Shown: positions 9,187 to 61,600 of the stretch, piece by piece | How positions within the stretch are numbered: the first letter of the stretch is position 1 | Layout: each line of letters begins with the position of its first letter | Source of the DNA: Podarcis erhardii | Taxonomy: Eukaryota | Direction: 5' to 3' (one strand) | Assembly: GCA_964252035.1 (NCBI GenBank) | Contig: OZ176201.1 | Length of the DNA stretch: 64,000 bases | Translations under genes and position numbers: made by a program | Notes under the pieces: generated by a model | Databases searched by the model: none | The model's input: only the letters and a program-made list of their open reading frames with translations | Told to the model about the DNA's origin: nothing

Positions 9187-11427
9187 TAGTAGTCACCACA
9201 CAAGATCATATGAAGGCCTCCCCATTGTGTTTCTATAGACAAAGTTTCAGCCTTAAATTTAGAGCACTTTTGACCTGCGGTGCCTATATCACTATGGAAG
9301 CCTGCTTCTGCCTGAACCGTTTTTCTTCAGCGATGCTTGTAAATCTTTCCCTGTGGCTAATGGCTCTAAGCAACTCAATTCATTACATTATAGCTCTATC
9401 CCTCAGCAGCTAATGTAGGGCCTGCCCTCATATGACTGCATATTATCTAAAATACAATGATTCAGTTAGGAAATGCGCAGGTAAAAATTTGGTGCCTGCT
9501 ACCCAAACACATTACTAGTTTTTGAGTAGAAATGTTTTCCACATAAGGAGGAAATGTCCAATTGATGCAAAATGAGTTCCTACACTTTGTGCAACTTTTG
9601 GTTCACTGGTGGAATTACTTTAGGCTACTGTTTTCTTGCAAGCCCTTGCATCTGTGAGAAGAGGCGATTGCACACCCCTTTAAATCTTGTGTGCATATTG
9701 TAGCTGTATAGTGAATTGAGCAATGGCCCTCTGGAATCCGACAAATCTCAGACTTCACATGTTAAAAGACCAGTATGCAGCCACAAAGCTAACTTATCTT
9801 CAGCAGTTGATCTGCCCTGCAAACCTGGCTTGTGTGAGTCTACAGCTTAAATGTTGCAATATTGCTAAACACTGTTCCTCAGGCCATGTACCTTAATAAC
9901 CTCCAGACTGAAGCTGTATTGCTTAAGCAGTTTTAAGATGCAATTAACAAATGACAGTGGCTAGATAGAAATTCCACTGTTAATTGCTCATGAAATATAT
10001 TTGTGCTTGGGGCCAGAAACATTACAATAAAGCTTTGCAATGGAGAGAGTTGTGTAGGTGAGCAGTTCCTCATCATGAGACAGTGCCTTGTCATAGTCTG
10101 TGAGTCCTGGTCTAGTTCAAACAGACCTGGCAAACAGGGCTTGATGTGAGTCCTGAAAATATTTGGATAAGAGTTCCCAGGAAGGACTTGTTTTCATAAT
10201 TATGAATCTTTAAATTTCCCTGGTGTGATTTTGGTTTTACTTTTGGCCAGAGTGGTGGTACACTGCAAACCGCTTCATAAGTTTTTTAGCCGCAGTATCA
10301 CTTATGCAAGGACTCATTTTAAGTTTATTTCTAGATCTCTTTGGTACCCAGTCACAAATAGCTGTTGTAAGAGTCAATATAGAAATGAACTTTTGCTTAT
10401 TATACATCTGAGCTAGGTAGTAGGGGAGCTTGCTTTCCAAGTCCAGTTTTGTCGGCTTGATGCCATTTTAGAAGCACATTCATCTGTTTGGCTTTCTAGT
10501 TTCATCAACATACTGATGTGTCCCGGGCAAATGTTGACTAGGGTACTAAGGAATTTCTAGCTTGGTAGAAAGTCTGCTACTAATAGTTGAGTGATAAGGA
10601 GGGGAAATACTTGGACTAAACATAACATTTTCATATTGATGTGAATAAGCTATAGCCAAATTCGCAATAGCATGGAAATCTAGCTGTGTAAATGCTCCTT
10701 TTGTTCTCTAAATTCTAAATGACTGATGCAGATTGGTTCCATCTTGTCTTTGTATATCTTATTCACCATGTAATGTACCTTTCTACAAGAAAGGTTTGTG
10801 TTGTAGAAATAGCTCATGGTTTCCACCCCCATTTTTAAACCCAAGGTCTGTTGCTGCCAATCTGTTTAATTTTGCAATTATGCAGATTCTGTAAGAAGCT
10901 GAGTAAAACATTAATCTTAAATCATGGTTGATTCACTCTTGAAGAGAAACCAGAGCAAAGGATTTCTACCCTTTTGGGATATCTACCAGTTAGTATGATT
11001 GGCTTTACTGCCCTGCCACTTACTGTGGAGGTACATAATGACAGTATATAAACTGTTTTATGCTCTCCTGTAGGGCAAGGTCTTGGATTGAGGACAATAG
11101 GCTGGTTGTCCTAGTTCCTAAGTTCACATTATTATGATCTGTTTGTTGACAGTAGACAGCTGAACTCATGGCTTGAGAAGAAACTTGGAGGAAGCTACTC
11201 CAACCATGAATCAAGCATATAGTAAAGTATGTGTAAAAAGATCTCAATAGATACCTGGGTAGATAGAAAGAACCATTGTGTCTGCCAGTCATATTATCCA
11301 CCTGACTCCTGTGTGGTTAGATTGGTGGCTCAAAGCAAACGCCTTTAAGTGGATTTGTTACCTTTCAGCTTGACTTGATGCCTAATGGTGGTTTTAGTAG
11401 TAATTCTGTTTTTCTTCTTCTTTTCAG

Positions 11428-17600: not shown

Positions 17601-20600
17601 GTGTCTGCGTTCAGGAAGTGCAGAGTATAAGCTTTTTGTGCAAGGTGCATGATGTTCATGCATTTGAACTAAGCATTCTTCATTGTTCTTGGGAATGCAT
17701 AGCATGTCTGTGGCATAGTAGCTTCGCTATTGTTTCTTCAGAAGTCACTTAAGATGAACTTACTGAGTACTAGACTTAGGAGTTTATAGCGCTTGAATTT
17801 TGCAGTAGTAACTTAAACAAAAAGGTGACTGCGAATTGAGTATAATGAGGATTTTCCCAACTGGGGGTGCGAGTCTTGTTGGGCTATATTGCAAAACTAA
17901 AGCTGCTTTTAAATCCTTCCAAATAGGAAAACTGGTAGACATAAGTCTAAATAAATCTAGCAGCGTTTTCTGCAAAACAAGCAGGCAGGACCTTGGTATA
18001 AAGATAAGGAGAATTCTGGCTGCAAATGTCAAGGATGTATTATCAGGCATTTCTCAACTCATTTCCTCAGGCTGCAAACCTTGAGATCCTCCTGCCTTTT
18101 GTTATGGATCATTATCATACTCAATAGCTTATGGGTTCTTTTTGGAAAAGCTAAACTGGAAATTCGTGACAAAACAATGTGTTCTTGAGGGGAGATGGTC
18201 TCCGTGTCCCATTTCCCAACACCCCAATTTGGCTATATAGAGTGTGTATTTCCTTGGCCCTCTTTCCACTGGGATGGCTACTGGCCAACATAAAAAACTG
18301 GGAGACTTCCCTAATTGTGGAAATAATTTTTGAGCTCCTATTTTGTATCTTGTAGGGGCTGGTGTTGGTGATATAGGTGTAGAAGTTGAAGATCCTCAAG
18401 GGAAGAACCCCGTGGAAGTTGCAATAGAAGACAAAGGAAATCAAGTCTATCGTTGCGTGTACAAACCTCTTCAAGCTGGTCCCCATACCATTAAAGTGGC
18501 GTTTGCTGGAGAGCAAATTCCCAAAAGCCCTTGGGGTATTCATGTTGGTGAAGGTATGTGTTTAGGGCAGATGTATAACTATTTAACCATATTACTGGAT
18601 ACATGTGCACATTAAGTGCAGTATCTATGAGACTCTCTAAACGTGGGAATTTAGTCTTTTGGCTTGGATAAAGCAGTTCAATTCTTGCATGTAAGTCATT
18701 TCCCCAAAAAAGGACTTTTAAGTGTTAGTATCTTATCACATTTAACTAACTGGGTTTTATCAGTCTTGTCATCTTAAATGACCGCATTGCTCCTTCTTAC
18801 ACTTTTAGAATTGAGCTTTCTTGCTGTGTCTCTTTAAAACCAACTATATTCACTTTATTTTGTATCACAACTCTCTTCCCTTCTTGAACTGACACTTGGC
18901 TTTCTATTCCATCCTTGCCTGCTCCTGTGCTTTCAGACCTCTGCTCACCTCTCCTGAGCTACTTTCAATTTGTGAGATGTTGGACTTCACTGCTATTGGC
19001 TTCATAGTTGGGCAAGCTCTGTCGGTAAGAGGGTGTGCAGGGTGAACTTGTGTTGCTGCGTTTTTTTCCTGAACACCTAGTCAGCAGGCAGGTTTGCAGC
19101 CCTAAGCAGAAGTGGCTGGGTTGTATGAAAATGTTGCAAGCGGCAGGTCAGGCTTCAGGCAGTCTCGCAAGAAGTCAAACGGCTTAACCACAAACTGCCA
19201 AACTTTGTTGCAAGGAGCTTGAAACTGAACTTCGGCTTGCTGCTACATCCCTGGTTTGCTGCATCTACAGATGGATGTAGAACTAGTCAATGCAGATTGG
19301 CTGGGGGGGTGAGAATTCCCTGCATGCTTGCAGCAGGACAGCTTTTCGTGGGATGAATTGGTTTTCCCTCCAAGGAAATGGTTGCCAACTCCAGAAGGAA
19401 ATGCATGGAGTTGAGCTGTTGAGAGCCCAAGCCTGCATGCCTCACAGTCCAATTTCATGGCTAGGCCAAATACTGACAACTGTGACCCTGCTTATCTCCC
19501 ATAAATCATCATTCTGTATGTGGTCTTTTTCACACTGTGTATCCAGTGGTTTCTGCATACAGACCTGCTTTCCCTAATGGTGACGGTGTTCAGGAAAGCA
19601 TGTTTAAACTCTTGCGTGTGAATTATATTTCCCCACCTCCATGGTATTGTTCATTTCAGGCACACCTGCATGGGGCTTCCTCTGGGGGATTAAATGTGCT
19701 AATTTAGGGGCAATAGCAGGATCAGCATAGCAACACTTGTCTCAACAATGCAAGGTGCAACATCTCTATGAGATGCTCCCTGTCTCATGCTATGTTTCAC
19801 TTCTTGCCCTCTTCTTCACCCCCCACCCCTTGAAACCTGAGACTTCACTGGGGAAAAAAAAAGTCTGGTTCAAACTGGAAGGTTTCATCTGCATGCATGC
19901 CCTAAGGCAATATGCCCTCCTAAGTTTGAAACTGTGAAAATGAGGATACTTTGCTCCTTTTACTGTTGTAAGACCAAAAACACTTGCCTTTTCTTTTTTA
20001 AAAAACAAGTTTCTGCAAAACAAATTCCTTCCAGTAGCACCTTAAAGACCAACTAAGTCAGTTCTTGGTATGAGCTTTCGTGTGCATGCACACTTCTTCA
20101 GATGAAGTGTGAAGCACTTCATCAACAGCATCTCTCATGCTGTTGTAAATTTGTTAGGAGTTTAGTTCATTTAAATGAGACTTGGGTTTGTACATAGTGA
20201 AGCACGTGAAGCAAAAAAACTGCAACCCCGAGTTTTATGTTAATATAATGTGCATTGACAGCCTCAGTCTTGCCTCCTTAAGACTGCAAAATGGTGTTCA
20301 GGTTTTACATTTCATAAACTTAAAATCTCATCCATCTTAAAGCAAGCTGAGAGAAACCGTTCCAGACTAGCTTGGCTAAGTTAAATATCTCTAGGAATCA
20401 AAGGCTGTATTGATGTCTGTCTGCAATTCGCTTGCAGCGTGCAATCCAAATGCCTGCCGTGCCAGTGGTAGAGGCCTCCAACCTAAAGGAGTTCGGATCA
20501 GAGAAACCGCAGACTTCAAGGTTGATACTAAAGCTGCAGGGAGTGGAGATATCCATGTGGCAATAAAAGGACCAAGTAAGTGCTCGGCTTCTTAGCATTG

Positions 20601-20929
20601 CTGGGGCTTTGGGGTGGGGCCAGGGAAGTTTGCAAAGGGCTTAAAAGTGTAATCCATCGCCTTGTGATTCTGGTATCTGTATGTTGACTTTATCCCCTGG
20701 GGAAACTCCAGAAGTGAAATGGAGCCGCTCTTTTCTCTCTCTCATATCTAATTGCACAAGAGGAGACTAGGTAAACATGGCTGGAAATTTGAAATGACTG
20801 GTTCTTTGGGTGTGATAACCGCCTTGTTTACCTGTTTATACAGAAGTAATCTGAGCTGTGCAACTGCTTTAGTGGGTTTGGAAAGGCTTGAACTTCTACT
20901 TCACTATCTATGGTGCAAAGCTCTTGGAC

Positions 20930-20969
<40 letters not shown>

Positions 20970-26900: not shown

Positions 26901-29900
26901 TAAATACAGGGCTTGTGTAATCAAAGTGGCTCCTCCTTTAATTGGATGAAATGTTCCCGCCCCCTAGGTCCAGATTGGGCAAGGCAGTCATCCCCAGAAG
27001 GTGAAAGTTATTGGACCCGGGGTGGAGAGAACTGGTCTGAAAGCCAATGAACCTACTCACTTCACAGTAGACTGCACAGAGGCAGGAGAAGGTAAAACCA
27101 GAATCACTAACACCGTTAACCTAAGCTCTATTTGCTGCTGTTCCAGTGGAATTGTTCTAGAAAGAAATGTGCTAATGGAAGTGGGTGACAAGGCTGTTAA
27201 GTCTGTGTAAATGTGTTAAGCAGGAGTAGAGAGCCTTGGGCTCTCAAGATGTTGCTAAAATGCAACTCCTATCAGCTTTAGCAAACATGACCAATGGCCA
27301 GGGGTAGTTGGTAGTTCAACAACATCTGGAGGGCGTAGGGTTCTCCATACTAGGGGTCAAGCCACAACTACTGATACGAGGGAGCAATTGTGAAGTCATT
27401 TTACTAACAAATTGATACTTTTGTTTTCTTCCTAGGTGATGTCAGTGTGGGCATTAAATGTGATGCTCACGTATTGAGTGAAGAAGAGCAGGACATAGAC
27501 TTTGGCATCATACATAATGCTAATGATACATTCACAGTTAAATACACACCCCCTGCAGCTGGGCGTTACACTGTCAAAGTGCTGTTTGCTGGAGAGGTAT
27601 GTAGTTATGATGGTGGAGGGGGGAGTTGAGATGCCATTTTATATTGCTCTCAGGTTAGCTGAAGCTTCTGTATGTATGACATTATTGTATGACTGATTTA
27701 TTTTTAAGCTCTGTTTCACATCTCACAAGGGTTCACACCTGAAGGTCCTCAGGGTGGTTTATGACGAAGAACAGCAATTATAAAAACGTATCTGATAATA
27801 TATAGAGATGGTTGTAGCAGATAAAAAAACCACTTAATGGGCTCTTGATTTCATGTTCTGCAGTTGTTTCTGACTCCCTTGCAGTTGTCACTAATATTTG
27901 AAGAGCAAAATGAAATTCAGTGCTTGCTCTTTAGAAATGAAACTTGTTTAATGCACAGATAATACAAAAACGGATAATAAATTTGATGTTCTCTTGCTCT
28001 GTGGCCAAGGACTGATTGTAGTCGGAACTGATTTAGCATCAGTTAAATAAAAATTTAGGGCACTTCTATAAGACACACACCAAGAAATAGGAATGCTTGT
28101 TAAACAGATGGCAGAAAAGGTACCATGCAAAGCATCATTTCTGCTGTGTATGGCACTGTGGCATTTGCTTGAATGACCACTTGAAATGTTCCATGATATG
28201 TGCATTTAGGCCAAGGGTGGTCTAAGCAGGATCAGCATTTGCCTTTTGATCTTCTGGAGCAGAAGATTAGATTAATATTGGGGTTTCTGAGTACACACAA
28301 AGAGTTGATTACAGTGGTACCTCTGTATGGTTCCGGAGGTCCATACTTAACTTGAAACTGTCCTTAGCCTGAAGCACCACTTTAGCTAATGGGGCCTCCT
28401 GCTGCCGGAGCACGATTTCTCTTCTCATCCTGAAGCAAAGTTCTTAACCTGAGGTACTATTTCTGGGTTAGCGGAGTCTGTAACCTGAAGCGTATGTACT
28501 TAAGGTGGTCTCTGCCCAAAAAGTTGATTTTATTTTGGTATTCTTTGTAAATAGAAGGAAGTCAATAACTTCATAGTCTGGTGTATGTTTGAATATATAT
28601 ATTTTGGAAAGATGCCCCGGGTGTATCATGAGCTAGTTCTTTTGTATTTTCTTACTTGAAAAGAAAACTTACATTGAAACAAAGCAATTTTTTTTGTCTT
28701 GAAGGAAATCCCTACAAGCCCTTTCAGAGTGAAAGTGGAACCATCACATGATGCAAGCAAGGTGAAGGCTGAAGGGCCTGGACTAAGTAAAACAGGTGAG
28801 AGTTCATCTTAACTTGGTGAGTGTGGAAGTTTGTCATGATAGCTGTTTGCTTGTTTCTTTTGTCTTCGTATTAAAACAGAGCAATACCCAGTTTGCGCAT
28901 ACTCCTTGTGCAATGGACTCCCACTTAAGCAGAAGGGACTTCCTTTTCCTCTCTTCCCTCGCAGCTCCTTGCATGTGTCCAAATCCAAAATGTGTTCTTT
29001 AGCCTTAGGGGACTGCAGTGGGAAGGAGAAGGAAGGGGAAATCCACTAGGACACTGTTGGATCTCACCTATACAATTCTGTATTTAGGAGAGATCAGTCC
29101 ATTGATACAAAAAAACTTAATCACAAAGAGTTCAGTTTGGTATTAGCCTGATGTCTTCATTCTGTTAAAAGAAAAAGAAAGCATGGCACACCTTCTTTCT
29201 GAATATGCCTTAAGGGGTGATGATGTTCTACTTTTTCTCCTACTTAGGTGTGGAAAATGGGAAGCCAACACATTTCACCGTGTTCACAAAAGGTGCTGGA
29301 AAAGCCCCTCTGGATGTTCAGTTCAGTGGACCGATGGCAGGAGATGCTGTCAAAGATTTGGACATAATTGATAACTATGATTATTCACACACCGTAAGAT
29401 ACACTCCAGTACAGCAGGTAGGATTTACTATAAGAGGTATTAATGTGATCTCTTCTGTCTCATGGCTTAGCCCCAGGCAGCATGATAGCAGCAGGACCAG
29501 AGGAGGAGACCGTGATCTCCTCTCCCAGGGATGGTTTGGTTGAACTATCACTTTATGTTCAAAATGATGTTACGAGCTGCAACTTTCATTTTTGCCCCTA
29601 GTAGTTTAAGTATAGTGACTGCTGTGTAATCCTGCTCTTCTTGTGATCCCTTCCTGGTTTCTGCACTGCCGGGCATCTGTATTGGTCCATTGATACAGGT
29701 GGTCTTTATCTAAGCCATGTTCATTTTTATACCAAGATGATCCTTTGGGTATTTTGTGCAACTTTTAGGTGTCCATAATTTGGAGTAGCTGGGTTCTATA
29801 GGCTTTTGTTTTAGTTGGATCTCGGTGGCAGAAACTTCAATGCCAGCTTTCTCTTTGGCATGCCGCTCGTGACACTGGCTGGTGTAAATAGAACTGGAGT

Positions 29901-41900: not shown

Positions 41901-43649
41901 CAAAGCAATTCTGATGTTACTAGATGCTAAGCACTCTTGCGTGTCAACTATCTAACATTGCCAGATATAGAATGGGAATGCATTGAACGTCAGATGAATG
42001 AAACCCTTACCCCCCCCTCCACAAATTGTACTTGGGTCCCCTCTCTTACCTCATTCTTCCAGTTACTGAAGACCTAACAGGCTTTTATTTAATGTGTTCT
42101 GAGTACTGCAGACTTATGCAAGAATATTTGAGTACGTAAAATACTTATTGGAGCAAGTACGTTTCAGCTGTTGGCAAATCTAATTCAGCATTTTAAGAAG
42201 TCTTTCTTCGCTGAAGTTGTGAAAGCAACTCAGCCCAAGGGCCAGGGGAGGCAATGGCATTTGGAATTAAATTGCATGTACACTGCACACCGTGAACCTA
42301 TGCTGAACGGGATGCACTTGGTCTAATGTAGCCGTTGCATGAATAACCACCTTTTGTGTAATTGGTTTTAAGGCAAACATGTCTCAAGGGACAACTGACA
42401 GAGCTCTGATTTTGTATTACTAAGTTAATAGCTTTTTAATTCTAGCTGATGAGCCGGATACCCAGTCATGGCGCAGTCCGCTGAAAGCAATTTCAGAGTT
42501 CTTTAAAGGTGACCCACAGGGTGAATCTAATGAGACAGGTTTGAACTTTTACTAACTAATTACCTGTGCCTCCAGCAAATCCTCTAAACTGTATAAAGTG
42601 CTGCTGTGAATGAGCTTAATTGAACTTCTGTGCTTAACTGCCGCTGTACTATTAATTCTCCACTGAGTTATCCTTTTTACTAAACAATTCCTTCTTTGAT
42701 TTATATGCACACTTACTTTGGTCCTTGATCTAAATTGTAACTGCAGGCAGTTCTAATCATGTTTGCAACTAATCTTGTGAAATAGCTGCATGTGCAAATC
42801 CACATATCTTGATTTTCTGGGAATAGGTCCTTGGAGCTCTTCTTACCTTGAACTAGCCGATCATAACACTTGTTTGGCAGCACCAAATTTTGTTGACTGC
42901 GCTCAACTTCTTAATGTCATACTGAGGGGTAGAGCCTAAAGAAGGCAGGGTATTTTTTTCCATTCTGCACCAGTTTTCATATATTTATTCAAATGTCAGT
43001 TTGATCCCATTTCTACATTAATCTGCATTTTTATTATAAAAAAGCATGAGCATTTGTATTCAAATACACATTGTCATAATAAATACTTTAAAATGCATAT
43101 TTTATCAGTTTCTCAACCTTTTAAATGCTAAAATATGCAGTTTAATTTTTTTATACATTTTGCTGTTTTTGAGAAGTGTATTGCAAAATTTGGAGAGCTG
43201 TTCTGATCTTTGTATTAATCTGGGAGGTGCAAATTGATTTGGTTTGCTCATCGATGCAGACCAAATAAATCTCTCCTCCATGCCTGGGTTATAACGAAAG
43301 TTACTAACTATTCCTGACTAACACGCAGTACTGAATTGGATGTTGAGCCTAATCAGTAGTAGTGTTCAAATAAAAAAAGTCTTCCTTTTTCTGGAAGCTT
43401 ATATTTAAATCTGCCCGATAACTGACCTAACCAGCTGTATAATTTTGGAACAATAAATCACTCCAACCCCTATTTGATGGGGGTTTCTTAGCTTACAGCC
43501 ATTGGAGTTGAGCCAGCCAAGGAACTGCTAGTGATTTCACCTCTCTCTAATTGAGGTCACAGACTGGGAATGATAGGAATAAATTGGCTTATCTGAACAG
43601 ACCACAAAGCAGATGTCTCTGCAGATTTCTTGCAAAGCTTTAAATCAGC

Positions 43650-43683
<34 letters not shown>

Positions 43684-46600: not shown

Positions 46601-49600
46601 AGTAACTGACTGGCAGTGGTTTCATGTAAAGGGCCTTCTCAGCCCTAGCCCTTCTGCATGCAAAGCAGATGCTCTACCACTGAGCTGCACCCCTTCACCA
46701 TGCACAGTGAATTCCCCTTGGTGATTGCAGCTTGATGCAAGAATAAGTTGAGCCCAAAAGTCTGCTGCAGAATTAGTTCAAAGTGGAGCCTGTGGCCAGA
46801 TGCCAACTGTGTGCCCCCAATAGGCATCTTTCAAGCACAAAGAATGTGGAAGTGTTGGTAAGCATGCCAGTCTCTTAGGAAAGCATCCATTACAGCCTGA
46901 AGCAAGCTCTAATGCTAGAGCCTAGGGTTGACAGCAGGGAAAGACCATCTTTGCACCAAAGGAGTGACTGCACTGTTGCCTTGATCCACAGCGGTCCATT
47001 TCTAGTAGGGTGTATGTCGTGACATCTTCTGGTTGTTTAACAGCATTAAGGGGGCACAGTGGGCTTCAAGGGAAAGAGCAGCTGTCTCTGCTGCAATAAC
47101 CACCTACTTCTTTTCACACTCCCCACCTTACAACCAGCAACCTGTCGTTTGAAAGCTGACACAAGGATCATGCTTTCTGCATGAATAAAGCTTTGTGTTG
47201 CTCATGCAGATGGCAAGTCGTGCAGGGCTCCTTTAAAGTTAAGCCAAACTACTTTAGTGTTCACAAACTTACAGACCTCTCCTTATCAAAGTATACTGTG
47301 GTACCCTGATAAAAATTCTCATCTGTAAAACATTGCTGTCTTGTGTGAAAAATGCTTCTGATGTGTTACAAGTGCCAGATAAAGAAGAAATGGATCTGGA
47401 GGTGCAAATGAATCTCTTCCCCACTTCATCCACCTCCACATGCACCCAGGGGAACCTTGCGCTACAGCTGGGGTGGTTTGCAAAGGTTTCATGACAAAAG
47501 CCTGGTTTAGGCTTGCTTGTCTGCAGAAGTTTGGATTAACTTGCTGTGTGTTTCATAATGCAGGTGTCCAAAAGGAAACTGCACAGGACTTTCTTAGCAG
47601 AAGATATGAGAATCTGCTCTGATGCTCACCATACCATTTCTCTCCTAGGTCCTGGCATTGCAGACACAGTGAAGTCAGGAGAGGAAGTTGGCTTTGTGGT
47701 TGATGCTAAATCTGCAGGCAAGGGCAAAGTGACATGCACTGTCCTGACACCAGAGGGTACAGAAGTCGAAGCAGAGGTCATTGAAAACGAGGATGGAACA
47801 TACGACATCTATTATACAGCTGCTAAACCAGGAACCTATGTAATTCATGTCCGCTTCGGTGGCGTGGACATTCCAAACAGCCCCTTCACTGTCATGGTAA
47901 GATACCTGGCTTTTGGTTTTGAAACCCTTTGCGTGAACTTAACAGGTAGACTGATAAGTAGTGAGCATGTTAGCTTTAATAAGTCACATGGAGTTTGACA
48001 CAGTCGTTTGCAGCCTATTAGTCCAATCCTTATCAAGAGTAATGAGAAGAAAGTTCTGATGAGTTCAGTAGGACAAACGCACAGGTAAGTGGCGCTAGGA
48101 TTGCAGCCTAAATTAGCATTTGGAGTGAGCTGAGTGTTTTGCCTATGTGGTTCTTGTGGACAAAGCAGTGTTTTTTCAGCTATGAGAAATACTACCTCAC
48201 AAAACCCTAGTGTCGGATGCCATTCTTTTCAGATATGCTGTTGTACCACTTTCCCCCTTGTTCAGGGCTCTTCGCCGTAGTGGTCCCAGCTAGTTGGGAA
48301 CTGTGAGCAAGAAGTCAGCCCAACACAGAGTGCATGCGCAAGAATGGAGTTGGTTCATGCGGAAAGAGGGAAGGTGGCTAGCTTGGAAGTGTCATGCAAC
48401 CCTTGCCTTCTGCTTCTGGTGTAGCTGCTTTCACCACTCCCACACTGTGTACGCCACAGAACCCTATGCATATGTACCTCTAAGTTGCGATGTTTTTATA
48501 AGCTCTATGAATGAAGAGGGTTTTTAAAACTATACCTTGCCTTTTGCCACTAACTAGGCTACAGATGCAGATGAAGTTGCAGTGTTGTCTCAGGAGCCAC
48601 TAAATGCAGCATGTCCCCCTGGATTCCATCCCTGGGTACCTAGTTTTGTTTTTTTACACTGTCTTCCGTGTTCCATGCAAGAGTTGACATCCTGCCTCTT
48701 GGGTCTGTCTAAGCTTGCTTTCTTGTCATATCTTACTGGTGATCAAAAAGCTACTTTGGGGCAACTTGGGTTTGATTCAGAACCTTCCTTCATATATATA
48801 TATATATTTAAGAACCCTTAACATCACAATCATTTTAAACGGTGCATCTGTGGTACTTTGTCCTTGGGGAGCTATTTTCTTCTTGACTTCAGATGGTGAA
48901 CGGCTTCTTCCTAGAGTATTGTCACTGACCATGTTGCTCTGGCTTTATGTTTTGGTTTCTCTTCTGCTTTAAAAAAACCACAACTTTCTTCCAGACCATA
49001 GCCAGCTTCAGTGTTCCTTTGGACGGAGCTATCCTTGCATCTTTTACTCTTCCATTTTGTATGTTTTTAAAACTCTCTTCTGAATGTTTTTCACGTTAAA
49101 CAATGAATGGGAGCAAAGCTTTGTGTGGTGGTCAACAGTCTGCAGTTGAGTGGTGTCTTCATTCTGGATGCAACTGTCTGAACTGACCAAAAATAGCTAA
49201 GCAAACTGTTTTGTGCTAGAATGACAATAACTTTTTCTCCACAATAGGTCACGGAAGAAGCTTATGTTCCTGATGGTGACATGAATGGTCTTGGGTTTAA
49301 GCCTTTTGATATGGTCATTCCTTTCGCAGTAAGAAAAGGAGAAATAACTGGTAAACAAGCTTTCAGCACACAGTTGATGACTCTCTTTAAAGCAGTGGTG
49401 AGGACCCTGTGGCCTGCCGGATGTTGGGCTCTTAACTTCCACAGTCCCTGACTGCTGGTTGGGGCTGATGTGGGTTAGAGGCAACATCTGGAGAGCCACA
49501 GAGTCTCCAAACCTTAGTTAATGTCAAGGAAAATGCCTTTCCCCCACCTGTCTTTTGGGTGCCCCTTGCATGGCTCAGTAGTTTAGCTTTGTAATAGAGG

Positions 49601-52600: not shown

Positions 52601-55600
52601 TCTCTGTCATACGGAAGGGAATATAGGAAAGAACTGAAAATAAATTCTGTGTGTGCAAGCTTAAGACGTATTAAATTGCTGAGTAAACACACAAACTTAT
52701 ATTCGTTCTCTTTGGAGAGATGTACAAAAAGATGTTAAAATAATTTAAATATCCTACCCCATGTTTATGCATAGTTTTTCAACCTTTGCAGAGAGCCCTC
52801 TACAGTTCTATGTGAACTATCCCAACAGTGGAAATGTAACTGCTTATGGACCTGGCCTTGTCTATGGTGTAGCAAACAAGCCAGCAACCTTTACCATAGT
52901 CACAGAAGATGCTGGTGAGGGTAAGTGGTCTAATCCATAGTCTCTGAAGAATTTACTTGACATGAATCCTGTTTGATTTTTGGTGGAATATTTAACTTCG
53001 ATATAAGCACACCCCAAAATTTTAAATTCCGAGGCGGATGCTATAATCAGACTTCATAGAGGGTGAATAGAAATAATTCATCATTTTCTTCATTCCCCCA
53101 GTAACTTTAGGGATCCATAAATATACCAGTGCATGGTTCAACAAAGCATCACATTGTACATCACAGAAGTACAATCTACTTCTGAAGCATTTTGCAGATT
53201 ACATGATGTGTTACAACTGCCCCATCTAACATTATGGTGACCCTAATGATGGGTTAGGCTCAGAGCTACCCAAAGCCATGAAGTGAGCTTTATGGCTGAG
53301 CTTGGATGTGTACCTGCAAGTCCAAATACGATTCTGGACACTGAACCCTCCTTTAGGAGAAACGTAGATGTTCCTGTAAAGAGCCATAGAGTTGGGACCC
53401 AGCGTCTTACTGCCCTTGTAGTCCAACCCCTTGTTTGCAGCAGGAAATTCAGAGCTGATTACAGTCAGTTTGACACAGACTTAATTCCCTTAATTCAAAG
53501 TTGCTTGCTTTCACTCCCAATAAAACATTTTTGAAGATAACTTGAATATGACAAATGAAATCTTCAGAGGGCTAGCCATGATGCTCAATCCAAGCAGGGC
53601 CTCCCACATCTGGAACTGAAACTTCGTTCTTAATTGAAGTTCACTGATTTTTATTTCAGACCATGTCTTGAAAAATGTAAGTTTGAGAATTCTTGTGGCA
53701 CTTTTTTCTCCAACGTGACAGGTGGCCTGGACCTAGCAATTGAAGGTCCCTCCAAGGCAGAGATCAGTTGCATTGATAACAAGGATGGCACTTGCACCGT
53801 GACTTACTTGCCAACTCTTCCAGGAAACTACAGTATATTAGTCAAATACAATGACAAACACATCCCAGGAAGCCCATTCACTGCCAAAATCACAGGTACG
53901 AGGAGCACTTGAAACAGCTACGATGGGCCTAAAAGTTTTGTGTTTGCAATCGGTTGCATTTAGTATAAATTTACATAAAGAAAAGACTTACCTTTAACAC
54001 TCATACTCTGTGTAGACTGCAAACGGAGAACTGACAACTTGTTTTTAACCATGTGATGAAGTCATGTTGTGTTTAGCTGGCTTTTGCCCAGTAATTTAGT
54101 ATGAACTGCAGAAACAAAAGGTTCCCTGCAATAACTTCTGAGCTGTCAAGTGTTGTCCAGTTACTGTCCACGGGAGTCCTGGTTTCGTGGAGCATAAATT
54201 TGCATTTGTAAGCAGCACACATGTCTTCTGATTCTCATCAATACTTTCTTTGTAAATTTAAGTGGAAAGGCATTTGGATGGTTTGCCCAGAATGTTAAGA
54301 TCCAGTAATGTTAATACTTAGTAGTGTTTTAATCCAAAGTCCTAATGGGAAATTTTCCTTCTTAAAGATGACAATAGGAAGCAATCTCAAGTTAAACTGG
54401 GTTCTGCTGCTGACTTCCTGTTGGACATTAATGAGACTGACCTTAGCCTCTTGACAGCCAGTATTAAAGCCCCATCTGGCCGAGATGAACCTTGTCTTCT
54501 GAAAAGGCTACCCAATAACCACATTGGTAAGTCTTAATCATCTTCTAGGGAGGCTGCTGTATTGGTTGTGTGGTGCTGCCAGGGTAGTCTTGGGGAAGCT
54601 TGTGAGCCTGGGCCACAATTGGAATCGAATAATACTTTTAATTTCTGGCTAGAGTGGGATTTTGATGCCACAAATATTTAATGCCAGCTATCTTACAGGG
54701 ACACGGGTGGCACTGTGGGTTAAACCACAGAGCCTAGGGCTTGCCGATCAGAAGGTTGGCGGTTCGAATCCCCGCAACGGGGTGAGCTCCCATTGCTCGG
54801 TCCCAGCTCCTGCCAACCTAGCAGTTCAAAAACATGTCAAAGTGCAAGTAGATAAATAGGTACTGCTCCAGCGGGAAGGTAAACTTCTCTGGTTCGCCAG
54901 AAGCAGCTTAGTCATGCTGGTCACATGACCTGGAAGCTGTACGCCGGCTCCCTCAGCCAATAAAGTGAGATGAGTGCTGCAACCCCAGAGTCGGTCACGA
55001 CTGGACTTAATGGTCAGGGGTCCCTTTACCTTTACCTTTACTTTTACCTATCTTCCAGTTCTGTATTGTGATTTGACAGTGTGTTTAGAGGGGGGGGGCG
55101 CAAAAAGATAAAGTGTGAAGTTACAAATTTGTCTCACTTCTAACCTCTGTCTGGCAGGTATCTCATTCATTCCACGGGAGGTGGGAGAGCACCTGGTCAG
55201 TATTATGAAGAATGGGAGCCATGTCCCCAACAGTCCGGTGTCCATTATGGTGGTCCAGTCTGAGATTGGTGATGCGAGCAGAGCAAGGGTTTCTGGACGT
55301 GGCTTAGTCGAAGGACGCACGTTTGAAATGTGTGACTTCATTGTAGATACAAGAGATGCAGGTCAGTACTGGGATTCCGAGGCTGCCAGAAAGTATCTAA
55401 GGGATGCCTGTGGGCTGCGGGTTGCCCACCTGTGATGTGGTTGATCTGCTGTTGTTGTTCTGAGTCGCAGTTGTCCGATCTTCACAGCTACTGAGCAGAG
55501 CAAAATTGCCTGACTTGTAAATTGTGGTTGCCATGATGTAGAACAAGTTTGGATGCTCTGTCAATCTGCTAATTTATATAGGTTAAAACTCACAGCTCTA

Positions 55601-58600
55601 TACCGCAAGCAGCATATCAAGCAAAATCCCATATGTGACCATGAGCTGAAACGGCTGGCTCACTTGGAATGGTTAATATACAATGACTGCAGTCCATAAA
55701 GCCGTCCATCAAGATTTAGGCGGTGCTCATTGAAGCTCTTTACAACTGCTTGCACTCATCCCAGCTGCTTTCTTTTCTAGGTTATGGTGGGATATCGCTG
55801 GCAGTTGAAGGACCTAGCAAAGTAGATATCCAGACAGAAGATCTAGAGGATGGAACTTGCAGAGTTTCGTACTTTCCAACTGTACCTGGTGTCTACATAG
55901 TATCTACTAAGTTTGCTGATGAGCACATCCCAGGTAAGAGAAAAAGAGCCTACGTAAGCGAGCCATTGCTGGTCCACTTCCCCATCAGCGCTGACCTCTT
56001 GTAATAAGTGCAGAGTCTATAGGACACCATCTAGGCTTCCCACCAGGGCCTTCATGTTCTGAAAATGCCTGAAGATGCTTGTTTGCTAAATTTTGGAAGG
56101 CAGGATAATAAACTTCTTGCGCACCTTGAAGATGCTTTTGTTTGAGGGGTTGTCTCCTGCTGCAGTGTAACACTTATCTCTTCGCTACTCAAACTAGAAT
56201 ATTGGTTTGGTACAGGTGACTCTCAACATACGTGGGGGTTGCGTTCTAGGGTGTAGCTTGCAAAGCCAAAATCACGAATAGTCAAAATACAGTGGGGTCA
56301 TAGGTGGGTGGGATTGCCAAAGCTTTTTTTTCCCAGGACACCTGCCCCACCTTTAATTAATTTAAAATTCGCAAAGCATGCAAAGCTGAATGTGTGTAAA
56401 TAGCAAGTTAATCTGTGTAGGAAGATGGGGTTACCTTGATAGTCATCGGTGATAAGTCTCATGCTTAATGTGCTTAGTTAACAATGCAGTGGTCCAGCCT
56501 TCCTCAGTGGGAAAGAATTCTAAGATGGTAGCGGAAATAACTATTAGTAGACGATATGTTACTTTATTGCCTGTGAAAGTCTTTGCTTCCTGTACTGATA
56601 GATGGAACTCAGTGTTGTTTTGTCTCTACTAACTACAGGGAGCCCATTTACTGTGAAAATAAGTGGTGAAGGAAGGGTGAAGGAAAGCATTACACGTACT
56701 CGGCGGGCTCCTTCTGTGGCCACGGTTGGAAGCTTGTGTGATCTTAACTTAAAAATTCCAGGTAAGTTAGTTCTACTAATAAATTTACTGTTTTGGAAAC
56801 CATAAACCAATAAGGCATTGAATCTTCTGGGCATTCTTTGCAATCCGATTTAAAAATGGAATGTTTTCCAAATACTTCTAGAGATCAGGGAAGGCATTCT
56901 TATATAGATCGGGGCTTTGCATGGTAGGACTCACACCAATTTCTTCCTTGGCCCCATGAAGCAGCAGTGGCATTTAAATTTTGCTTTCTAGCATATCACC
57001 CACTGACTCAGTTCTAATAACAAGTGACCTGGTTCACATGTAATGCTAAGCGAAACCTGGACTTAAGGTGAATGCATAGGCTATTCAAAATGATATCATT
57101 ATTTTTGCCTCTTAGACCTTCCTCCTGTTGCCTGTCTACCTGAGTCTAAGCCACAATTTGACTTAGCACATGGCTGAACCCAGATTTGTTTTATTAACCA
57201 AGGTTTTTTCCTGGTTTCACAGTTTATGGGTTGTCTAGAGGAAACAAACCATGAGCTTGAGTTTGGGCTACATGTTAAGCCAAACCATGGCTTAACTCAC
57301 TGTAGCACAGCAGTACTGGATGAAGAACAATATGCCCAAAATTTCTGTTCTGGGAATTCATGCATTCATGCTATGTGTGAAGTACGGGTGCTAGGATGAT
57401 CTCAGAAGGTTGTACTTGAGTCACCTGATGCTTGAGTTACCTTCAGCCATATTTTTGGAAGGGTAGGAGCGCAGTTGCTGCTATAGAGATCTGTATCATG
57501 TGGATCTAACTGGGGGAGACGCATAAAATAATTGGCTGGTTAAAGAATAAATGCTATCTTCCTCATAGAGTGCACTAATATACAGAATATATTCAGCATG
57601 CTGCTTCAGTTTAATACATATTCTGACGTCTGTTTCTATCTCTTTCTCTGCTGCTCTAATCAATCTTGGTCTTCCTGTCTTCTGTTCCTTTCTTTCCCCC
57701 TATTGCCTTCTCATAGTTACATGGTTCCAAATGGCTATATCTCTGGAAAGATTGTCCCGTGTTTCACACCAGTTCATTCCCACTTTCCTGTGTGTTGAGC
57801 AGAAGGAAAACTGCCAGACTCAATTGAGAGAATCTTGGTGTCCTAGTTTCACAAAAAAACCAGCCAACATCAGACAACAATGTTTCCAATCGGTCCTTCT
57901 ATGGGATCTACAGATGTATTACATACCTGGCTCCTTAGGGGTAGTGGGTACGTTGTAGTACTGAGGTTGTCCTATAACTGCATTACATACTTCAATAAAA
58001 TCTGCTTTAAGGCGCAATGCATGGCAAGTCAGCAGCAAAAGTATTTGTTACAAAGACCTGTAACAAACCCTCAGTCAGTAATGGAGCCTGTGGCCCTCCA
58101 GATATTGTTGAATTCCAATTCCTATCAGTTCTTAGAATGGGTAATGTTCACTGCACTAAATCCAACTCTGTTCCCAAATAAAATTAGTTTTTTCTTCCTT
58201 TCCTTTCCTTTCCTTTCCTTTCCTTTCCTTTCCTTTCCTTTCAAGAGAACTTCAAAAAATCTTAAGCACAACTCCTCCTGGACATATTTGTCTGTAACCT
58301 GGTAGATTTGATCTCCTCTGTTGTGGGGGGAGTGTATTATGCCTGCAAATTCCATCCTCTTCTGTCAACAGGAAAAGGTCGGGTTTTTTTTACTTTCCAG
58401 TGGGGGATGAAGTGGACTTAAGTTGGGTGATTCAATTCTTGATTCATTTGTCAAGTGCTTCAGAAAGAGGCAGACTGCTTTCTGAATTGTGCACCTGCTG
58501 TATACATTGATTAAGTAAACATTCAAAAAAAGGGGGTGAGTGGGCTCAAATTTAACTCATCCCCCACACTTGAATGCCTGTGACTCAGTGTGAGTGCAGT

Positions 58601-61600
58601 TGAGGCTCCATCCCAATTCCATATTTGCAAGAAAAGGGAGCTGCTTAATATGCTTAAATCTTTTGAAGTATTCTCTTTTCGTTTGAGAGATTCTATAGCT
58701 TCAAAAATGGATGGTTGGGGCTCAAAGAGCAATGTATTGATTTCTCATTACCTGCTGCAAGCTCTCTTAACTCTGCTTTCTGCAGTCAATGGAGACACCG
58801 TGACTTGCTTGTCAAGGGTGGTGGGTGACAAAATAATTGGATTTGTGAAGATTCTTGGTTTTTGAGGTGAACTGATAAGTATGTGCTCGTCCCTAATATA
58901 TATATCTGACACTCTGCATGCACAGGTGAATGCTTGGTATGCATCACTTAATCGTCAGTTATGTTTTGCTGGTTGCAGTTCTGGGAAGTTGAGTTCCATC
59001 AGGTTCCCAGCAAATGTCTGCCAGGTAAAAGTGTTTTGGTGTATGATCTATAGACGAATGTGTACTCAAGGGCCACTTTGCATGTAATGTTTGAGGGCAT
59101 TTCAAACATCTGAAAGCAGCTGACTTTGGAACTTCCTATAGATCCCAAGAACCTCAGTTGTATAGTCAACTAAACTTGGTGTCTGGGTTTGCTATGGGGA
59201 AGGTTTCAAAACAACTGAAATACTGGGGAGCTCTGCCCTCGTGCACTGGGCATTGTGTGACAGAGTAAGATGTTTAGAAACCGAATCTACCTGCTCCCCA
59301 TTAATGGTCAGTTTCTTTCTTTCTTTTTAGAAATCGACATTGGTGACATGTCAGCTCGGGTCACTAGCCCATCTGGGAGAATGACAGATGCAGAAATAGT
59401 AGAGCATGATAAAAACACGTACTGTGTCCGCTTTGTACCACAAGAAATGGGGGTCCATAATGTGGATGTAAAATACAGAGGGCAGCATGTGCCAGGCAGT
59501 CCATTCCAGTTTACCGTTGGGCCGCTTGGTGAAGGAGGGGCCAATAAGGTCAGAGCTGGCGGTCCAGGACTAGAAAGAGCAGAGGCAGGCATCCCAGGTA
59601 AGACCTTCACTAAATTTCATCTGAATGCATGGGCATGGGTCTAAGGGCCTTGCAGTGAGAGGGGACAATAGCTGTAATCTTGGAACAGGGTACTTATACC
59701 TTGTAACACTAGAACACATTTCTGGAAGCCTAGTGACCCTGCCTTGTGTTGCAGAGCCCCATATCACAAAGGGATTGGAGGGCCACTTGCCTGCTTCTAA
59801 TTCCTGGGTGGTTGTTGTTGTTGTTAACAGCTGAGTTCAGCATCTGGACAAGGGAAGCTGGAGCTGGAGGTCTTTCCATTGCAGTAGAAGGACCAAGTAA
59901 GGCAGAAATTGCTTTTGAAGACCATAAAGATGGATCGTGTGGTGTATCATACACTGCTCAAGAGCCTGGTATGGATATCTTAAGCATTAGCAAGTTGAAA
60001 TGAAGCAAAACACCACAAAAACAATTCCTCCTTGCTTAGCAAAGTTCTTATTTCTTCCAGGTAACTACGAGGTGTCCATCAAATTCAACGATGAGCATAT
60101 TCCGGAAAGCCCTTACCTGGTTCCTGTGATTGCTCCTTCCGATGATGCTCGTAGGCTCACTGTTATGAGCCTTCAGGTGAGACATAAGGAAGCATCTCCC
60201 ATAGCCTACCACAAGCTGATACCATCCTTGTGCTCAAGCTCCTTAAAATTATTACTTGCTCACTAGCTACACTTCTTCAGAGGAGATCCCTTGGCAAGCA
60301 TGTAGGCCTTCCAAGTTAGGAAACAGCATCTGAAAAGGGGCGACTCTTTCCTAGTGCTATTCAGCTAAGGAACAACTATAGCCTCCATTCTCCCCGCACA
60401 GTGGCACTAAGCAGTTCTATAAACCTTGCTGTTAATTTTCTCACAAGGTTTGTCTATGTATGACAGCGTTCAGCAATGAAGCAATACTAAGTGGGGTAAG
60501 TTGGCTTGCATGATTGCATGCTGACAAGGCAGTTAGGCTAACATGCAACATTTCAGCTTGGCGTATGCTCCAAGAATGCACATGCTTGAACAAATGAGGC
60601 TCTGGGGTGAGCACAGAGCAGTAATTCACACATGTGCAGATGTTGCAAAACCACAAACTTGTACTTTAAATGGTTCTTAAACAGCAGCCAAAGTCTGAGT
60701 GGATTCCAGACTTCTAGTGGCTTGAGTTTGTACATAGTCCTGACTTTTTCGTGGTGTGCATCTAGCAACATTTTTAAGTGACTGTCTTTAATCTAAAATA
60801 AGAAGCCTGGAAGTTTCAGATTGAGCGTCATCCAGCCCATGATGTGTAGATTTGCTGCAGCTTGAGGCAGCAGTATTGGTTAAATTGCACTGCTTTTCAG
60901 AACTATGGTTTTATAGACTGACATTTGGTGTAACTTTCTAGCCAGAGCTGAACTTAAAACAAGGAGTTACAAGGACGATAATTAGCTGCTGTGGTACTGA
61001 TGTTTTTCTTGTGTTTCATTTAAAGACTCTTGACAGAATGTGTGGTGTCAGCTGACTTAAACCCTGAAGAGGGAAATAAAACTGATATTTTTTTGGGGGG
61101 GGGGAGGAGTAATCTTTTTACAAAAGATGTCTTTTGGCACTCCATAAAAAACTTCCTTGGTGTATTTTAGCTGCCTGTTTCAGTTTATTTCTCTCTTGAG
61201 GATAAAACTGTTAAGTTGAAATTAAGGTAAGCTCTGCACTGAAAGCAAAAGCTCAGCATTCCAGCGACCCTCCCCCCCGATGGAACTTCAATTTTCCAGT
61301 GGCTGGGGGCGGGAATCACACATGCATAACACCAGGAGACTCTGTTTTTTTGTATGTGTGGTGACCGCTACTGGGGAGCAGGTGTGCATTGATATATACT
61401 TTTGGTTCCACCTTTGCTGGCATGTTAACAGAAATCTCCAAAACGTTGTATTTGTTGGCATGGGGTGAAACATGCTTTGCTTAATCAGAAAGCTCCAGGC
61501 TTAATTGTCGGTGCAATATGGAAATTTATTTTTGGCAGCATATTAATGAGTTAGCTACACAATTAGGAAAAGAGATTTCAAGTGATTTTGGGAGTATGGC

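What the first reader, a model, noticed from the sequence alone, without database searches (positions are those of the whole stretch)
18816..60619. A layered RNA-level switchboard on one filamin gene
Seen together: a poison exon (off-switch), a 31-aa insert exon, the hinge-1 exon, the var-1 exon, an FLNC-like Ig20 exon and a recoding duplex. Three exons have ACTAAC within about 15 nt of a splice site (one downstream, two at the acceptor), and two have >100-nt AG-exclusion zones. Inference: QKI, RBFOX, PTBP1 and ADAR2 could jointly convert FLNB between off (neurons), flexible (epithelial) and a hinge-less, insert-containing, FLNC-like muscle form. Individual parts are known in mammals; their coordination and the Ig20 exon are hypothesis.
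Basis: inference. Interest (0 to 1): 0.7.

Follow-up and report, generated by a model that had tools for sequence, protein, structure and literature searches.

The report
Filamin B alternative exons and editing
This stretch is most of a filamin-B gene. It carries the known alternative exons and RNA-editing site of that gene, plus a conserved, unannotated exon related to the insertion thought unique to muscle filamin C. Nothing here shows that these events are switched together.

Summary
The window holds about 40 coding exons of a filamin-B orthologue on the + strand.

**Confirmed:**
- The 93-nt, 31-aa cassette exon (42446-42538).
- The hinge-1 exon (48558-48635).
- The 123-nt var-1 exon (56639-56761).
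- A CAG Q/R codon at an exon end (60174-60176).
- ACTAAC within 15 nt of all three cassette exons (post-hoc P about 2e-6). It also sits beside one constitutive exon and is not conserved beyond close relatives.

**Best new result:** a 231-nt in-phase exon (57717-57947) stays open, with both splice sites, in two other species. It is a paralogue of the filamin-C 82-aa Ig20 insertion exon: same intron, same phase, same WFQM..ERL start, and a pyrimidine tract over 100 nt long.

**Corrected:** the editing duplex is real, but its partner is a conserved island at 60994-61043, outside the finding. It is not 60559-60619.

**Not supported or untested:**
- The poison exon is an untested pseudo-exon candidate.
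- Long AG-free zones occur at about the chance rate.

**Verdict:** conserved known events plus one interesting exon; the 'switchboard' stays speculation.

The parts
18816..18934 (+). AG-free, 73% pyrimidine tract upstream of the poison-exon candidate
   Evidence: It is the longest AG-free stretch on the + strand, at 119 nt. It holds 12 PTB-type tetramers, above the 99th percentile (10) of 110-nt windows in the gene.
18937..19024 (+). Poison-exon candidate: 88 nt, shifts the frame, in-frame stop at codon 24. Unverified.
   Evidence: The acceptor is ...gctttcag| and the donor is CG|GTAAGA. My matrix scores are 7.6 and 7.2. Passing comparable cut-offs (acceptor at least 7, donor at least 5.5) are 57 intronic pseudo-exons. 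I obtained no cross-species or RNA data.
42446..42538 (+). 31-aa cassette exon: 93 nt, phase 1-1
   Evidence: It is open in the incoming phase and has weak splice sites, 5.6 and 4.0. A human FLNB cDNA encoding 2633 aa instead of 2602 aa exists (PMC2650634).
42551..42560 (+). ACTAACTAAT, 12 nt downstream of the 31-aa exon (QKI-type core plus half-site)
48549..48554 (+). ACTAAC ending 3 nt before the hinge-1 exon
   Evidence: It is too close to the AG to be a branch point. It is absent in L001, L005 and L006, which carry CTAAC about 20 nt upstream instead.
48558..48635 (+). Hinge-1 exon: 78 nt, 26 aa, phase 0-0, weak donor TGG|GTACCT
   Evidence: It is orthologous in L001, L005 and L006. FLNB exon 30 encodes hinge 1 (PMC6103745).
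48636..48710 (+). Conserved intronic block just downstream of the hinge-1 exon
   Evidence: It aligns with L001, L005 and L006, where other intron sequence does not.
56628..56633 (+). ACTAAC ending 5 nt before the var-1 exon
   Evidence: It reads ACTAAT in L012, a close relative. It is absent in L013, L001, L005, L006 and the filamin-C locus L007.
56639..56761 (+). Var-1 exon: 123 nt, 41 aa, phase 1-1
   Evidence: It has the same length as the human exon and is followed by a 2,569-nt intron, against about 2.5 kb in human (PMC2199218).
57610..57714 (+). AG-free, 78% pyrimidine tract upstream of the Ig20-insertion-like exon
   Evidence: It is 105 nt long. Its 17 PTB-type tetramers equal the maximum seen anywhere in the gene. 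The same architecture occurs in L013 (140 nt) and upstream of the filamin-C insertion exon in L007 (123 nt).
57717..57947 (+). Unannotated in-phase exon: 231 nt, adds 77 codons. Paralogue of the filamin-C Ig20 insertion exon.
   Evidence: Its splice scores are 7.3 and 5.5. It is the longest of only 8 in-frame open pseudo-exons among 231. It stays open with both splice sites in L011 (231 nt) and L013 (237 nt). BLASTP against the L007 insertion exon gives 13/38 identities, E=1e-5, and the alignment is.
58018..58023 (+). TGCATG about 70 nt downstream of that exon
   Evidence: GCATG also lies at +74 in L011 and +18 in L013.
60061..60176 (+). Exon ending in the Q/R codon CAG (60174-60176; target A at 60175). 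The S/G-site A is at 60168.
   Evidence: It corresponds to the mouse Flnb Q/R and S/G sites and to the edited intronic +4 A, here 60180 (PMC6161736).
60153..60199 (+). 5' arm of the editing duplex (exon end plus the first 23 nt of the intron)
   Evidence: Pair probabilities are 0.8-1.0. It is 90-97% identical in L001, L005, L008 and L012.
60994..61043 (+). Editing complementary sequence, inside the conserved intronic island 60958-61090
   Evidence: It forms an 18-bp uninterrupted helix, 60175-60192 with 61004-61021, which 0 of 200 shuffles reach. The arm is 85-94% identical across species, while the alignments that include the edited exon are 76-81% identical and other exons 77-89%. In the other species 33-37 of 38 pairs are kept.
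27106..27111 (+). ACTAAC 14 nt downstream of a constitutive exon (26968-27091); serves as a counter-example

Best explanation
The region is the body of a filamin-B orthologue. It carries a set of separate, mostly already-described post-transcriptional events, each with its own local signals.

1. Three in-frame cassette exons (31-aa insert, hinge-1, var-1) have weak or unusual splice sites. In this lineage each has a QKI-type ACUAAC within 15 nt of a splice site. At the two acceptors the motif overlaps the 3' splice-site region, where a bound protein would most likely block U2AF and cause skipping. Downstream of the 31-aa exon it would most likely promote inclusion. This step is inferred.

2. 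A fourth, unannotated exon of 231 nt sits in the intron after var-1. It is the filamin-B copy of the exon that encodes the 82-aa Ig20 insertion of filamin C. It has kept its acceptor, its donor, an open frame in the right phase and a long PTB-type pyrimidine tract in at least three species. It is therefore most likely a repressed, tissue-restricted cassette exon. Its use in mRNA is inferred.

3. The last codon of exon 60061-60176 is the ADAR2 Q/R target. It is held in a duplex of about 45 bp with a conserved intronic sequence about 820 nt downstream. The duplex and its conservation are shown; editing itself is inferred.

4. The proposed poison exon is an unverified candidate.

Nothing in the DNA ties these events into one coordinated switch.
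For: **Gene and exon map.** The exon chain keeps consistent phases.

**Known events.**
- Var-1 length and the size of its downstream intron match human (PMC2199218).
- The hinge-1 exon and its weak donor are conserved. Its regulation by QKI and RBFOX1 is published (PMC6103745).
- Human FLNB cDNAs of 2633, 2602, 2591 and 2578 aa came from a single cell type (PMC2650634).

**ACTAAC placement.** Four of the 10 intronic + strand motifs lie within 15 nt of a splice site (P=1e-4). Three of them flank the three cassette exons (P=1.8e-6, post hoc).

**Ig20-like exon.**
- The block 57592-57953 is the only alignable intron sequence in L011, at 75% identity.
- It has the same 231-nt length and an open frame in L011, and is 237 nt and open in L013.
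- Neutral simulations give P(no stop) of 0.065 and 0.028 for those divergences, and 0.012 for the shuffled exon.
- The filamin-C locus L007 has a 246-nt exon at the same position and phase. It starts GNWFQMVSAQERL and has a 123-nt AG-free tract.

**Editing duplex.** ADAR2 dependence, the S/G site and the +4 intronic site in mouse are in PMC6161736.
Against: **Ig20-like exon.**
- Its peptide has an odd composition (5 Cys, 3 Trp).
- Substitutions against L011 are spread evenly over codon positions (19/20/18; 10 synonymous against 30 non-synonymous codon changes). There is thus no sign of selection on the amino-acid sequence beyond the first 28 residues.
- It is decayed in one related lineage (L009, L010, L012: stops, lost acceptor).
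- It is missing where the intron is only about 500 nt (L001, L005, L016).
- It was not detected in the mammal-like contigs L014 and L017.
- A search of 1.84 billion representative proteins gave no filamin hit.

**ACTAAC.** The motifs at the acceptors are lineage-restricted, and one lies beside a constitutive exon.
Confidence: 0.7

Rival explanations
1. One reading: QKI, RBFOX, PTBP1 and ADAR2 act together, so that the poison exon, insert, hinge-1, var-1, Ig20 exon and editing form one coordinated switch between an off state, a flexible state and an FLNC-like muscle state.
For: - ACTAAC lies next to all three cassette exons, and the positions predict opposite outcomes.
- TGCATG is twice as frequent on the sense strand as on the antisense strand, 54 against 28.
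- PTB-type tracts lie in front of both candidate exons.
- Mouse Flnb editing is highest in skeletal muscle, cartilage and bone (PMC6161736).
- Hinge-1 is removed from FLNB and FLNC during myogenesis (PMC2199218, PMC7216277).
Against: - Motif co-occurrence is not coordination.
- The ACTAAC sites at the acceptors are not conserved in more distant orthologues.
- QKI and RBFOX2 activate the hinge-1 exon in smooth-muscle cells but repress it in breast cells (PMC12721327).
- Four different FLNB isoforms coexist in one human cell type (PMC2650634).
- No RNA data were obtainable.
Confidence: 0.12
2. The 231-nt Ig20-like exon is a dead relic of the ancestral insertion exon. It is never spliced into FLNB mRNA, and its open frame in three species is luck or a by-product of constraint on an intronic regulatory element, for example a decoy that tunes var-1 splicing.
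For: - Codon-position differences are flat, and the ratio of non-synonymous to synonymous changes looks neutral.
- The residue composition is unusual.
- It has decayed or been lost in several lineages.
- There is no protein database hit.
- Conservation falls from 86% to 64% along the exon.
Against: - Both splice sites, the frame, the phase and a frame-preserving 6-nt indel are kept across three species. Simulated chances of staying open are only 0.03-0.07 per lineage.
- It is the only conserved block in that intron in L011.
- Human FLNB uses a heart-specific exon in the same intron (PMC2199218).
Confidence: 0.3
3. The candidate at 18937-19024 is a true PTBP1-repressed poison exon of FLNB, equivalent to FLNA exonN.
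For: - It is preceded by the longest AG-free pyrimidine tract in the window, with PTB-type motif density above the 99th percentile.
- Its donor, GTAAGA, is good.
- Including it shifts the frame and gives a stop.
- From my memory of the FLNA variant nomenclature, not checked here, it lies in the intron that corresponds to the one holding FLNA exonN.
Against: - Passing comparable splice-score cut-offs are 57 intronic pseudo-exons, and almost any of them would introduce a stop.
- AG-free zones of this length occur at a similar rate on the antisense strand.
- No orthologous intron could be fetched.
- The primary FLNA paper is not held.
Confidence: 0.15

Closest known systems
Human and mouse FLNB splice variants: delta-H1 (exon 30), var-1 (exon 40), heart-specific var-2/var-3 (exon 40B/C) (van der Flier 2002, PMC2199218; Li 2018, PMC6103745)
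   Same: - The var-1 exon has the same 123-nt length, followed by an intron of about 2.5 kb.
- The hinge-1 exon sits between the same repeats.
- An extra exon lies in the same intron as human exon 40B/C.
   Different: - The extra exon here is 231 nt and open in frame. Human 40B/C is 147 bp and truncates the protein after 24 new residues.
- I could not show that the two are orthologous, because no match was found in the mammal-like contigs.
- The intron before var-1 is 705 nt here, against 102 bp in human.
Filamin-C 82-aa insertion in Ig repeat 20 (PMC7216277; Thompson 2000 as cited in PMC2199218)
   Same: - Same intron position directly after the var-1-equivalent exon, and same phase 1-1.
- The same start: two bases, one codon, then TGG TTY CAR ATG, giving W-F-Q-M, followed by E-R/K-L.
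- An AG-free pyrimidine tract over 100 nt long upstream.
   Different: - It encodes 77-78 codons instead of 82.
- Only about the first 38 residues are recognisably similar (34% identity).
- The rest lacks the T/R/S/E-rich character of the filamin-C insert.
- In filamin C the exon is part of the standard protein; here its use is unknown.
ADAR2 Q/R recoding of FLNA and FLNB with an intronic editing complementary sequence (Czermak 2018, PMC6161736; Jain 2018, PMC6166124)
   Same: - CAG is the last codon of the exon.
- The serine codon of the S/G site and the intronic +4 A are all present and all lie inside the duplex.
- The partner sequence lies in the downstream intron, and both arms are highly conserved.
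   Different: Nothing essential. The partner is about 820 nt away, and the target A faces a U. Editing itself was not observed here.
FLNA exonN, a PTBP1-repressed poison exon (Zhang 2016, as described in PMC8652244, PMC5816070 and PMC13542418)
   Same: A candidate exon preceded by a long pyrimidine tract, which would introduce a premature stop.
   Different: FLNA exonN is described as highly conserved in mammals and is shown by RNA data. This candidate has neither kind of support, and FLNB is a different paralogue.
Position-dependent splicing control by QKI through ACUAAY (PMC6103745)
   Same: Perfect ACUAAC cores lie next to three alternative exons, upstream of two and downstream of one.
   Different: At the two acceptors the motif ends only 3-5 nt from the exon, which is much closer than a branch point. 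The sites are lineage-restricted. No binding data exist for this species.

Membership tests
Filamin-B orthologue | Closer to FLNB than to FLNA or FLNC in diagnostic repeats | tested here: met
   Exon 62685-62816 is 42/43 identical to human FLNB 2eeb (81 bits), against 67 bits for FLNC 2d7p. The large exon matches FLNB 2di9 and 2dia best. Exon 59333-59596 does not discriminate.
FLNB var-1 cassette exon | A single 123-bp exon of 41 aa between repeats 19 and 20, followed by an intron of about 2.5 kb | tested here: met
   56639-56761 is 123 nt in phase 1-1, and the downstream intron is 2,569 nt. The definition is from PMC2199218.
FLNB var-1 cassette exon | Actually skipped in some transcripts | not testable with these tools
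FLNB hinge-1 exon | A small in-frame exon between repeats 15 and 16 | tested here: met
   48558-48635 is 78 nt in phase 0-0. It lies between the exon ending ...SPFTVM and the exon starting VTEEAYVP, and it is conserved in three loci.
ADAR Q/R recoding site with ECS | The target A sits in a long imperfect duplex with a complementary sequence | tested here: met
   Pair probabilities are 0.8-1.0 over 60153-60199 with 60994-61043. The 18-bp helix is reached by 0 of 200 shuffles.
ADAR Q/R recoding site with ECS | Both arms are conserved and the pairing is kept across species | tested here: met
   The arms are 85-97% identical, and 33-37 of 38 pairs are kept in 4 loci. Only one-sided changes (wobble to Watson-Crick) occur, with no double compensatory change.
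ADAR Q/R recoding site with ECS | A-to-G difference between RNA and DNA at the site | not testable with these tools
Filamin-C-type Ig20 insertion exon | A separate exon directly after the var-1-equivalent exon, in phase 1-1 | tested here: met
   In the window it is 57717-57947. In the filamin-C locus L007 it is 9336-9581, between 7149-7268 and 10181-10432.
Filamin-C-type Ig20 insertion exon | Sequence similarity to the insertion | tested here: inconclusive
   Pairwise BLASTP gives 13/38 identities at E=1e-5, and tblastn in the 20-kb locus gives E=0.002. The similarity is confined to the N-terminal half. The library-wide phmmer search found no filamin.
Filamin-C-type Ig20 insertion exon | Encodes 82 residues | tested here: not met
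   It encodes 77 codons in the window and L011, and 79 in L013. L007 has 246 nt, or 82 codons.
Filamin-C-type Ig20 insertion exon | Included in the mature mRNA | not testable with these tools
Poison exon of the FLNA exonN type | Conserved across species | not tested
Poison exon of the FLNA exonN type | Inclusion introduces a premature stop | tested here: met
   It is 88 nt, shifts the frame and gives a stop at codon 24. This is a trivial property of most intronic pseudo-exons.
QKI-regulated exon | ACUAAY in the flanking intron near the exon | tested here: met
QKI-regulated exon | The motif is conserved in orthologues | tested here: not met
   The hinge-1 site is absent in L001, L005 and L006. 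The var-1 site is kept as ACTAAT only in L012, and is absent in L013, L001, L005 and L006.

The most novel reading that the evidence does not exclude
The 'filamin-C-specific' Ig20 insertion is older than the split between filamin B and filamin C. In this lineage filamin B still uses its own copy as a tissue-restricted, PTBP1-repressed and RBFOX-enhanced cassette exon. Combined with hinge-1 skipping, that would give a filamin-C-like filamin-B isoform in striated muscle. Human heart-specific exon 40B/C would then be the degenerate mammalian remnant of the same exon.
Probability: 0.3. Interest if true: 0.6.

Novelty: new member of a known kind. Interest (0 to 1): 0.4.

Why it matters
- **Filamin evolution.** The 82-aa insertion in repeat 20 is what sends filamin C to the Z-disc and binds myotilin, and reviews describe it as missing in filamins A and B. 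A conserved, in-frame copy of that exon in filamin B would date the insertion to before the paralogues diverged. It would also give a natural system for asking what the insertion does to the repeat 20-21 autoinhibited pair.
- **Editing.** The mapped editing partner gives a precise target for deleting the ECS outside mammals.
- **Splicing control.** The lineage-specific ACUAAC sites at two acceptors are a neat test case for how splicing control is gained. The idea of a single coordinated switch, however, is not supported by anything measurable here.

Tried and rejected
Its duplex energy of -44.5 is within the shuffle background of -41 +/- 3. It is displaced as soon as 60994-61043 is included in the fold.
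3. **Duplex energy as a statistic.** It did not discriminate. Helix-run length and conservation did.
4. **Library-wide protein searches with the Ig20-like peptide.** The word search found nothing. The phmmer search gave three bacterial repeat proteins, which are compositional noise.
5. **Pfam.** It found nothing for the insert, hinge or Ig20-like peptides.
6. **AG-exclusion zones as independent evidence.** Rejected, because the antisense strand has a similar count.
7. **The primary FLNA poison-exon paper.** It is not held, so the positional equivalence rests on my memory only.
8. **Link to human exon 40B/C.** The mammal-like contigs L014 and L017 showed no match to the Ig20-like block.
   - L014, L015 and L017 could not be named to species.
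   - The L014 exon product differs at one of 83 residues from the chimpanzee entry P0009. I therefore did not take it for human, and used it only for that negative blast.
   - If any of these is human, that negative result should be ignored.
9. **Joined model.** I never built or searched a joined spliced protein; every exon was searched on its own by reference.

Full report
**What the window is**

The + strand carries a filamin gene. I placed exon boundaries using open frames, simple splice-site matrices and phase continuity. This gave 33 coding exons between 18356 and 62817 that keep frame with no stop, and at least five more upstream, including the calponin-homology exons. Exon 62685-62817 is 42/43 identical to human filamin-B repeat 22 (2eeb), which scores better than filamin C. 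The 598-nt exon matches filamin-B domains best. I never assembled or searched a joined spliced protein; each exon was searched by reference on its own.

**The three known cassette exons**

- The 31-aa exon is at 42446-42538. It is 93 nt, phase 1-1 and open, with weak sites. A human FLNB cDNA encoding 2633 rather than 2602 residues, along with 2591 and 2578 forms from the same cell type, documents an isoform 31 aa longer (PMC2650634). I could not fetch an orthologous copy of this exon.
- The hinge-1 exon is at 48558-48635. It is 78 nt, encodes 26 aa, and has a weak donor, GTACCT. The exon, the weak donor and about 75 nt of downstream intron are conserved in three other loci.
- The var-1 exon is at 56639-56761. 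At 123 nt it has exactly the human length, and it is followed by a 2,569-nt intron, against about 2.5 kb in human (PMC2199218).

**ACTAAC**

The motif lies 12 nt downstream of the 31-aa exon (as ACTAACTAAT), 3 nt upstream of hinge-1 and 5 nt upstream of var-1.

- Ten intronic motifs lie on the + strand within the mapped gene body. Four of them are within 15 nt of a splice site (P=1e-4). Three flank the three cassette exons (P=1.8e-6, a post-hoc test).
- At the acceptors the motif is too close to the AG to serve as a branch point. A protein bound there would most likely block recognition of the 3' splice site.
- Three cautions apply. A fourth motif sits beside a constitutive exon (27106). The motif is depleted in the window overall. 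The acceptor motifs are missing in more distant orthologues. The hinge-1 site is replaced there by an ordinary CTAAC about 20 nt upstream. The var-1 site survives only as ACTAAT in one close relative.
- QKI and RBFOX1 do cause hinge-1 skipping in human breast cells (PMC6103745). In smooth-muscle cells, however, QK and RBFOX2 activate the same exon (PMC12721327), so the direction cannot be read from the motif alone.

**AG-exclusion zones**

The two zones exist, at 119 nt and 105 nt, and they are the two longest AG-free stretches on the + strand. There are four of 100 nt or more on this strand and three on the other. Both tracts do have very high PTB-type motif density.

**The Ig20-like exon**

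This is the part that gained support.

- Exon 57717-57947 is 231 nt, begins after a strong pyrimidine tract, ends at GG|GTACGT, and is open in the phase left by var-1. Of 231 intronic pseudo-exons only 8 are in-frame and open, and this is by far the longest.
- Library-wide protein searches found nothing.
- I therefore fetched orthologous contigs through ORF fragments of the neighbouring exons.
- In L011 the only alignable intron sequence is the block 57592-57953, at 75% identity. That block is exactly the tract plus the exon. The exon there is again 231 nt, open, with both splice sites kept.
- In the more distant L013 the exon is 237 nt, open, and also keeps both sites.
- Random substitution at the observed divergences leaves the frame open in only 6.5% and 2.8% of trials.
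- A filamin-C locus, L007, matches FLNC 2d7p best. It has a 246-nt exon of 82 codons at the same place and phase, starting GNWFQMVSAQERL, behind a 123-nt AG-free tract.
- BLASTP between the two exon products gives 13/38 identities, E=1e-5. The four-way alignment keeps W, F, Q, E and L in the first dozen columns.

Evidence against function is also present. Substitutions are spread evenly over codon positions, and only the first 84 nt are well conserved. The exon is decayed in L009, L010 and L012. It is absent where the intron is about 500 nt (L001, L005, L016). It was not detected in the mammal-like contigs L014 and L017. Human FLNB has a heart-specific, truncating exon 40B/C in this same intron (PMC2199218), but I could not show that it is the same exon.

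**The editing site**

- CAG at 60174-60176 is the last codon of its exon. The serine codon of the mouse S/G site and the edited intronic +4 A are also present (PMC6161736).
- When 60120-61120 is folded, 60153-60199 pairs with 60994-61043 at probabilities of 0.8-1.0.
- The 18-bp uninterrupted helix is reached by none of 200 shuffles.
- That partner lies in an intronic island that is 79-89% identical in L001, L005 and L008 and 70% in L012. The alignments that include the edited exon are 76-81% identical and other exons 77-89%.
- In four other loci 33-37 of the 38 pairs are kept.
- The duplex is therefore real and conserved, but its 3' arm lies outside the finding's coordinates.

**The poison exon**

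The most plausible form is 18937-19024: 88 nt, a frame shift and a stop at codon 24. Its splice sites are ordinary. Fifty-seven intronic pseudo-exons pass comparable splice-score cut-offs. I could fetch no orthologous intron, and the primary FLNA paper is not held. It remains a candidate only.

**Coordination**

The DNA shows a sense-strand excess of TGCATG, 54 against 28, and motifs for QKI and PTB near the relevant exons. Motif presence is not evidence that the events are linked.

**Verdict**

This is a conserved set of known filamin-B RNA-level events, one correction (the editing partner) and one worthwhile lead (a filamin-B copy of the filamin-C insertion exon). The 'switchboard' is not supported beyond speculation.

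Noticed in passing
window 24460-24465: The intron after exon 24266-24459 starts with GC instead of GT (AAG|GCAAGT), so it is a GC-AG intron.
   Followed up: partly
window 52914-52926: Two in-phase donors lie 6 nt apart (GCTG|GTGAGG and GAGG|GTAAGT, scores 9.4 and 10.2). Using the upstream one would drop two residues (EG).
   Followed up: no
window, whole: TGCATG occurs 54 times on the sense strand and 28 times on the antisense strand (82 in total, against 57 expected). That is more than base skew explains. There is a local cluster at 16-20 kb.
   Followed up: partly
window 48636-48710: About 75 nt of intron just downstream of the hinge-1 exon is conserved in three distant orthologous loci. It is a likely splicing control element with no assigned factor.
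   Followed up: partly
window 60573-60718: A second, weaker conserved island lies in the edited intron (70-76% identity in L008, L012 and L013). Its role is unknown.
   Followed up: partly
window 61184-61247: A further conserved intronic block lies downstream of the editing partner (82% identity in L008; also covered by the L012 alignment).
   Followed up: no
window 7063-7122 and 46630-46686, - strand: Two borderline tRNA-model hits (30.7 and 29.5 bits, cut-off 29) lie inside introns. They are most likely tRNA-derived SINE fragments.
   Followed up: no
window 31549-31752 (+), 50110-50256 (-), 62063-62239 (-): Three ORF-like stretches share a '...WNALP.EVR.AP.L..F...' peptide pattern. They appear to be copies of one interspersed repeat family.
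   Followed up: no
window 36726-37083, - strand: ORF fragments resembling the C-terminal end of a retrotransposon reverse-transcriptase ORF lie inside an intron.
   Followed up: no
L001, L005, L016 compared with the window: The intron between var-1 and the next exon is about 500 nt in several orthologous loci, but about 2.5 kb here, in L013 and in human. The short form lacks any trace of the Ig20-like exon.
   Followed up: partly
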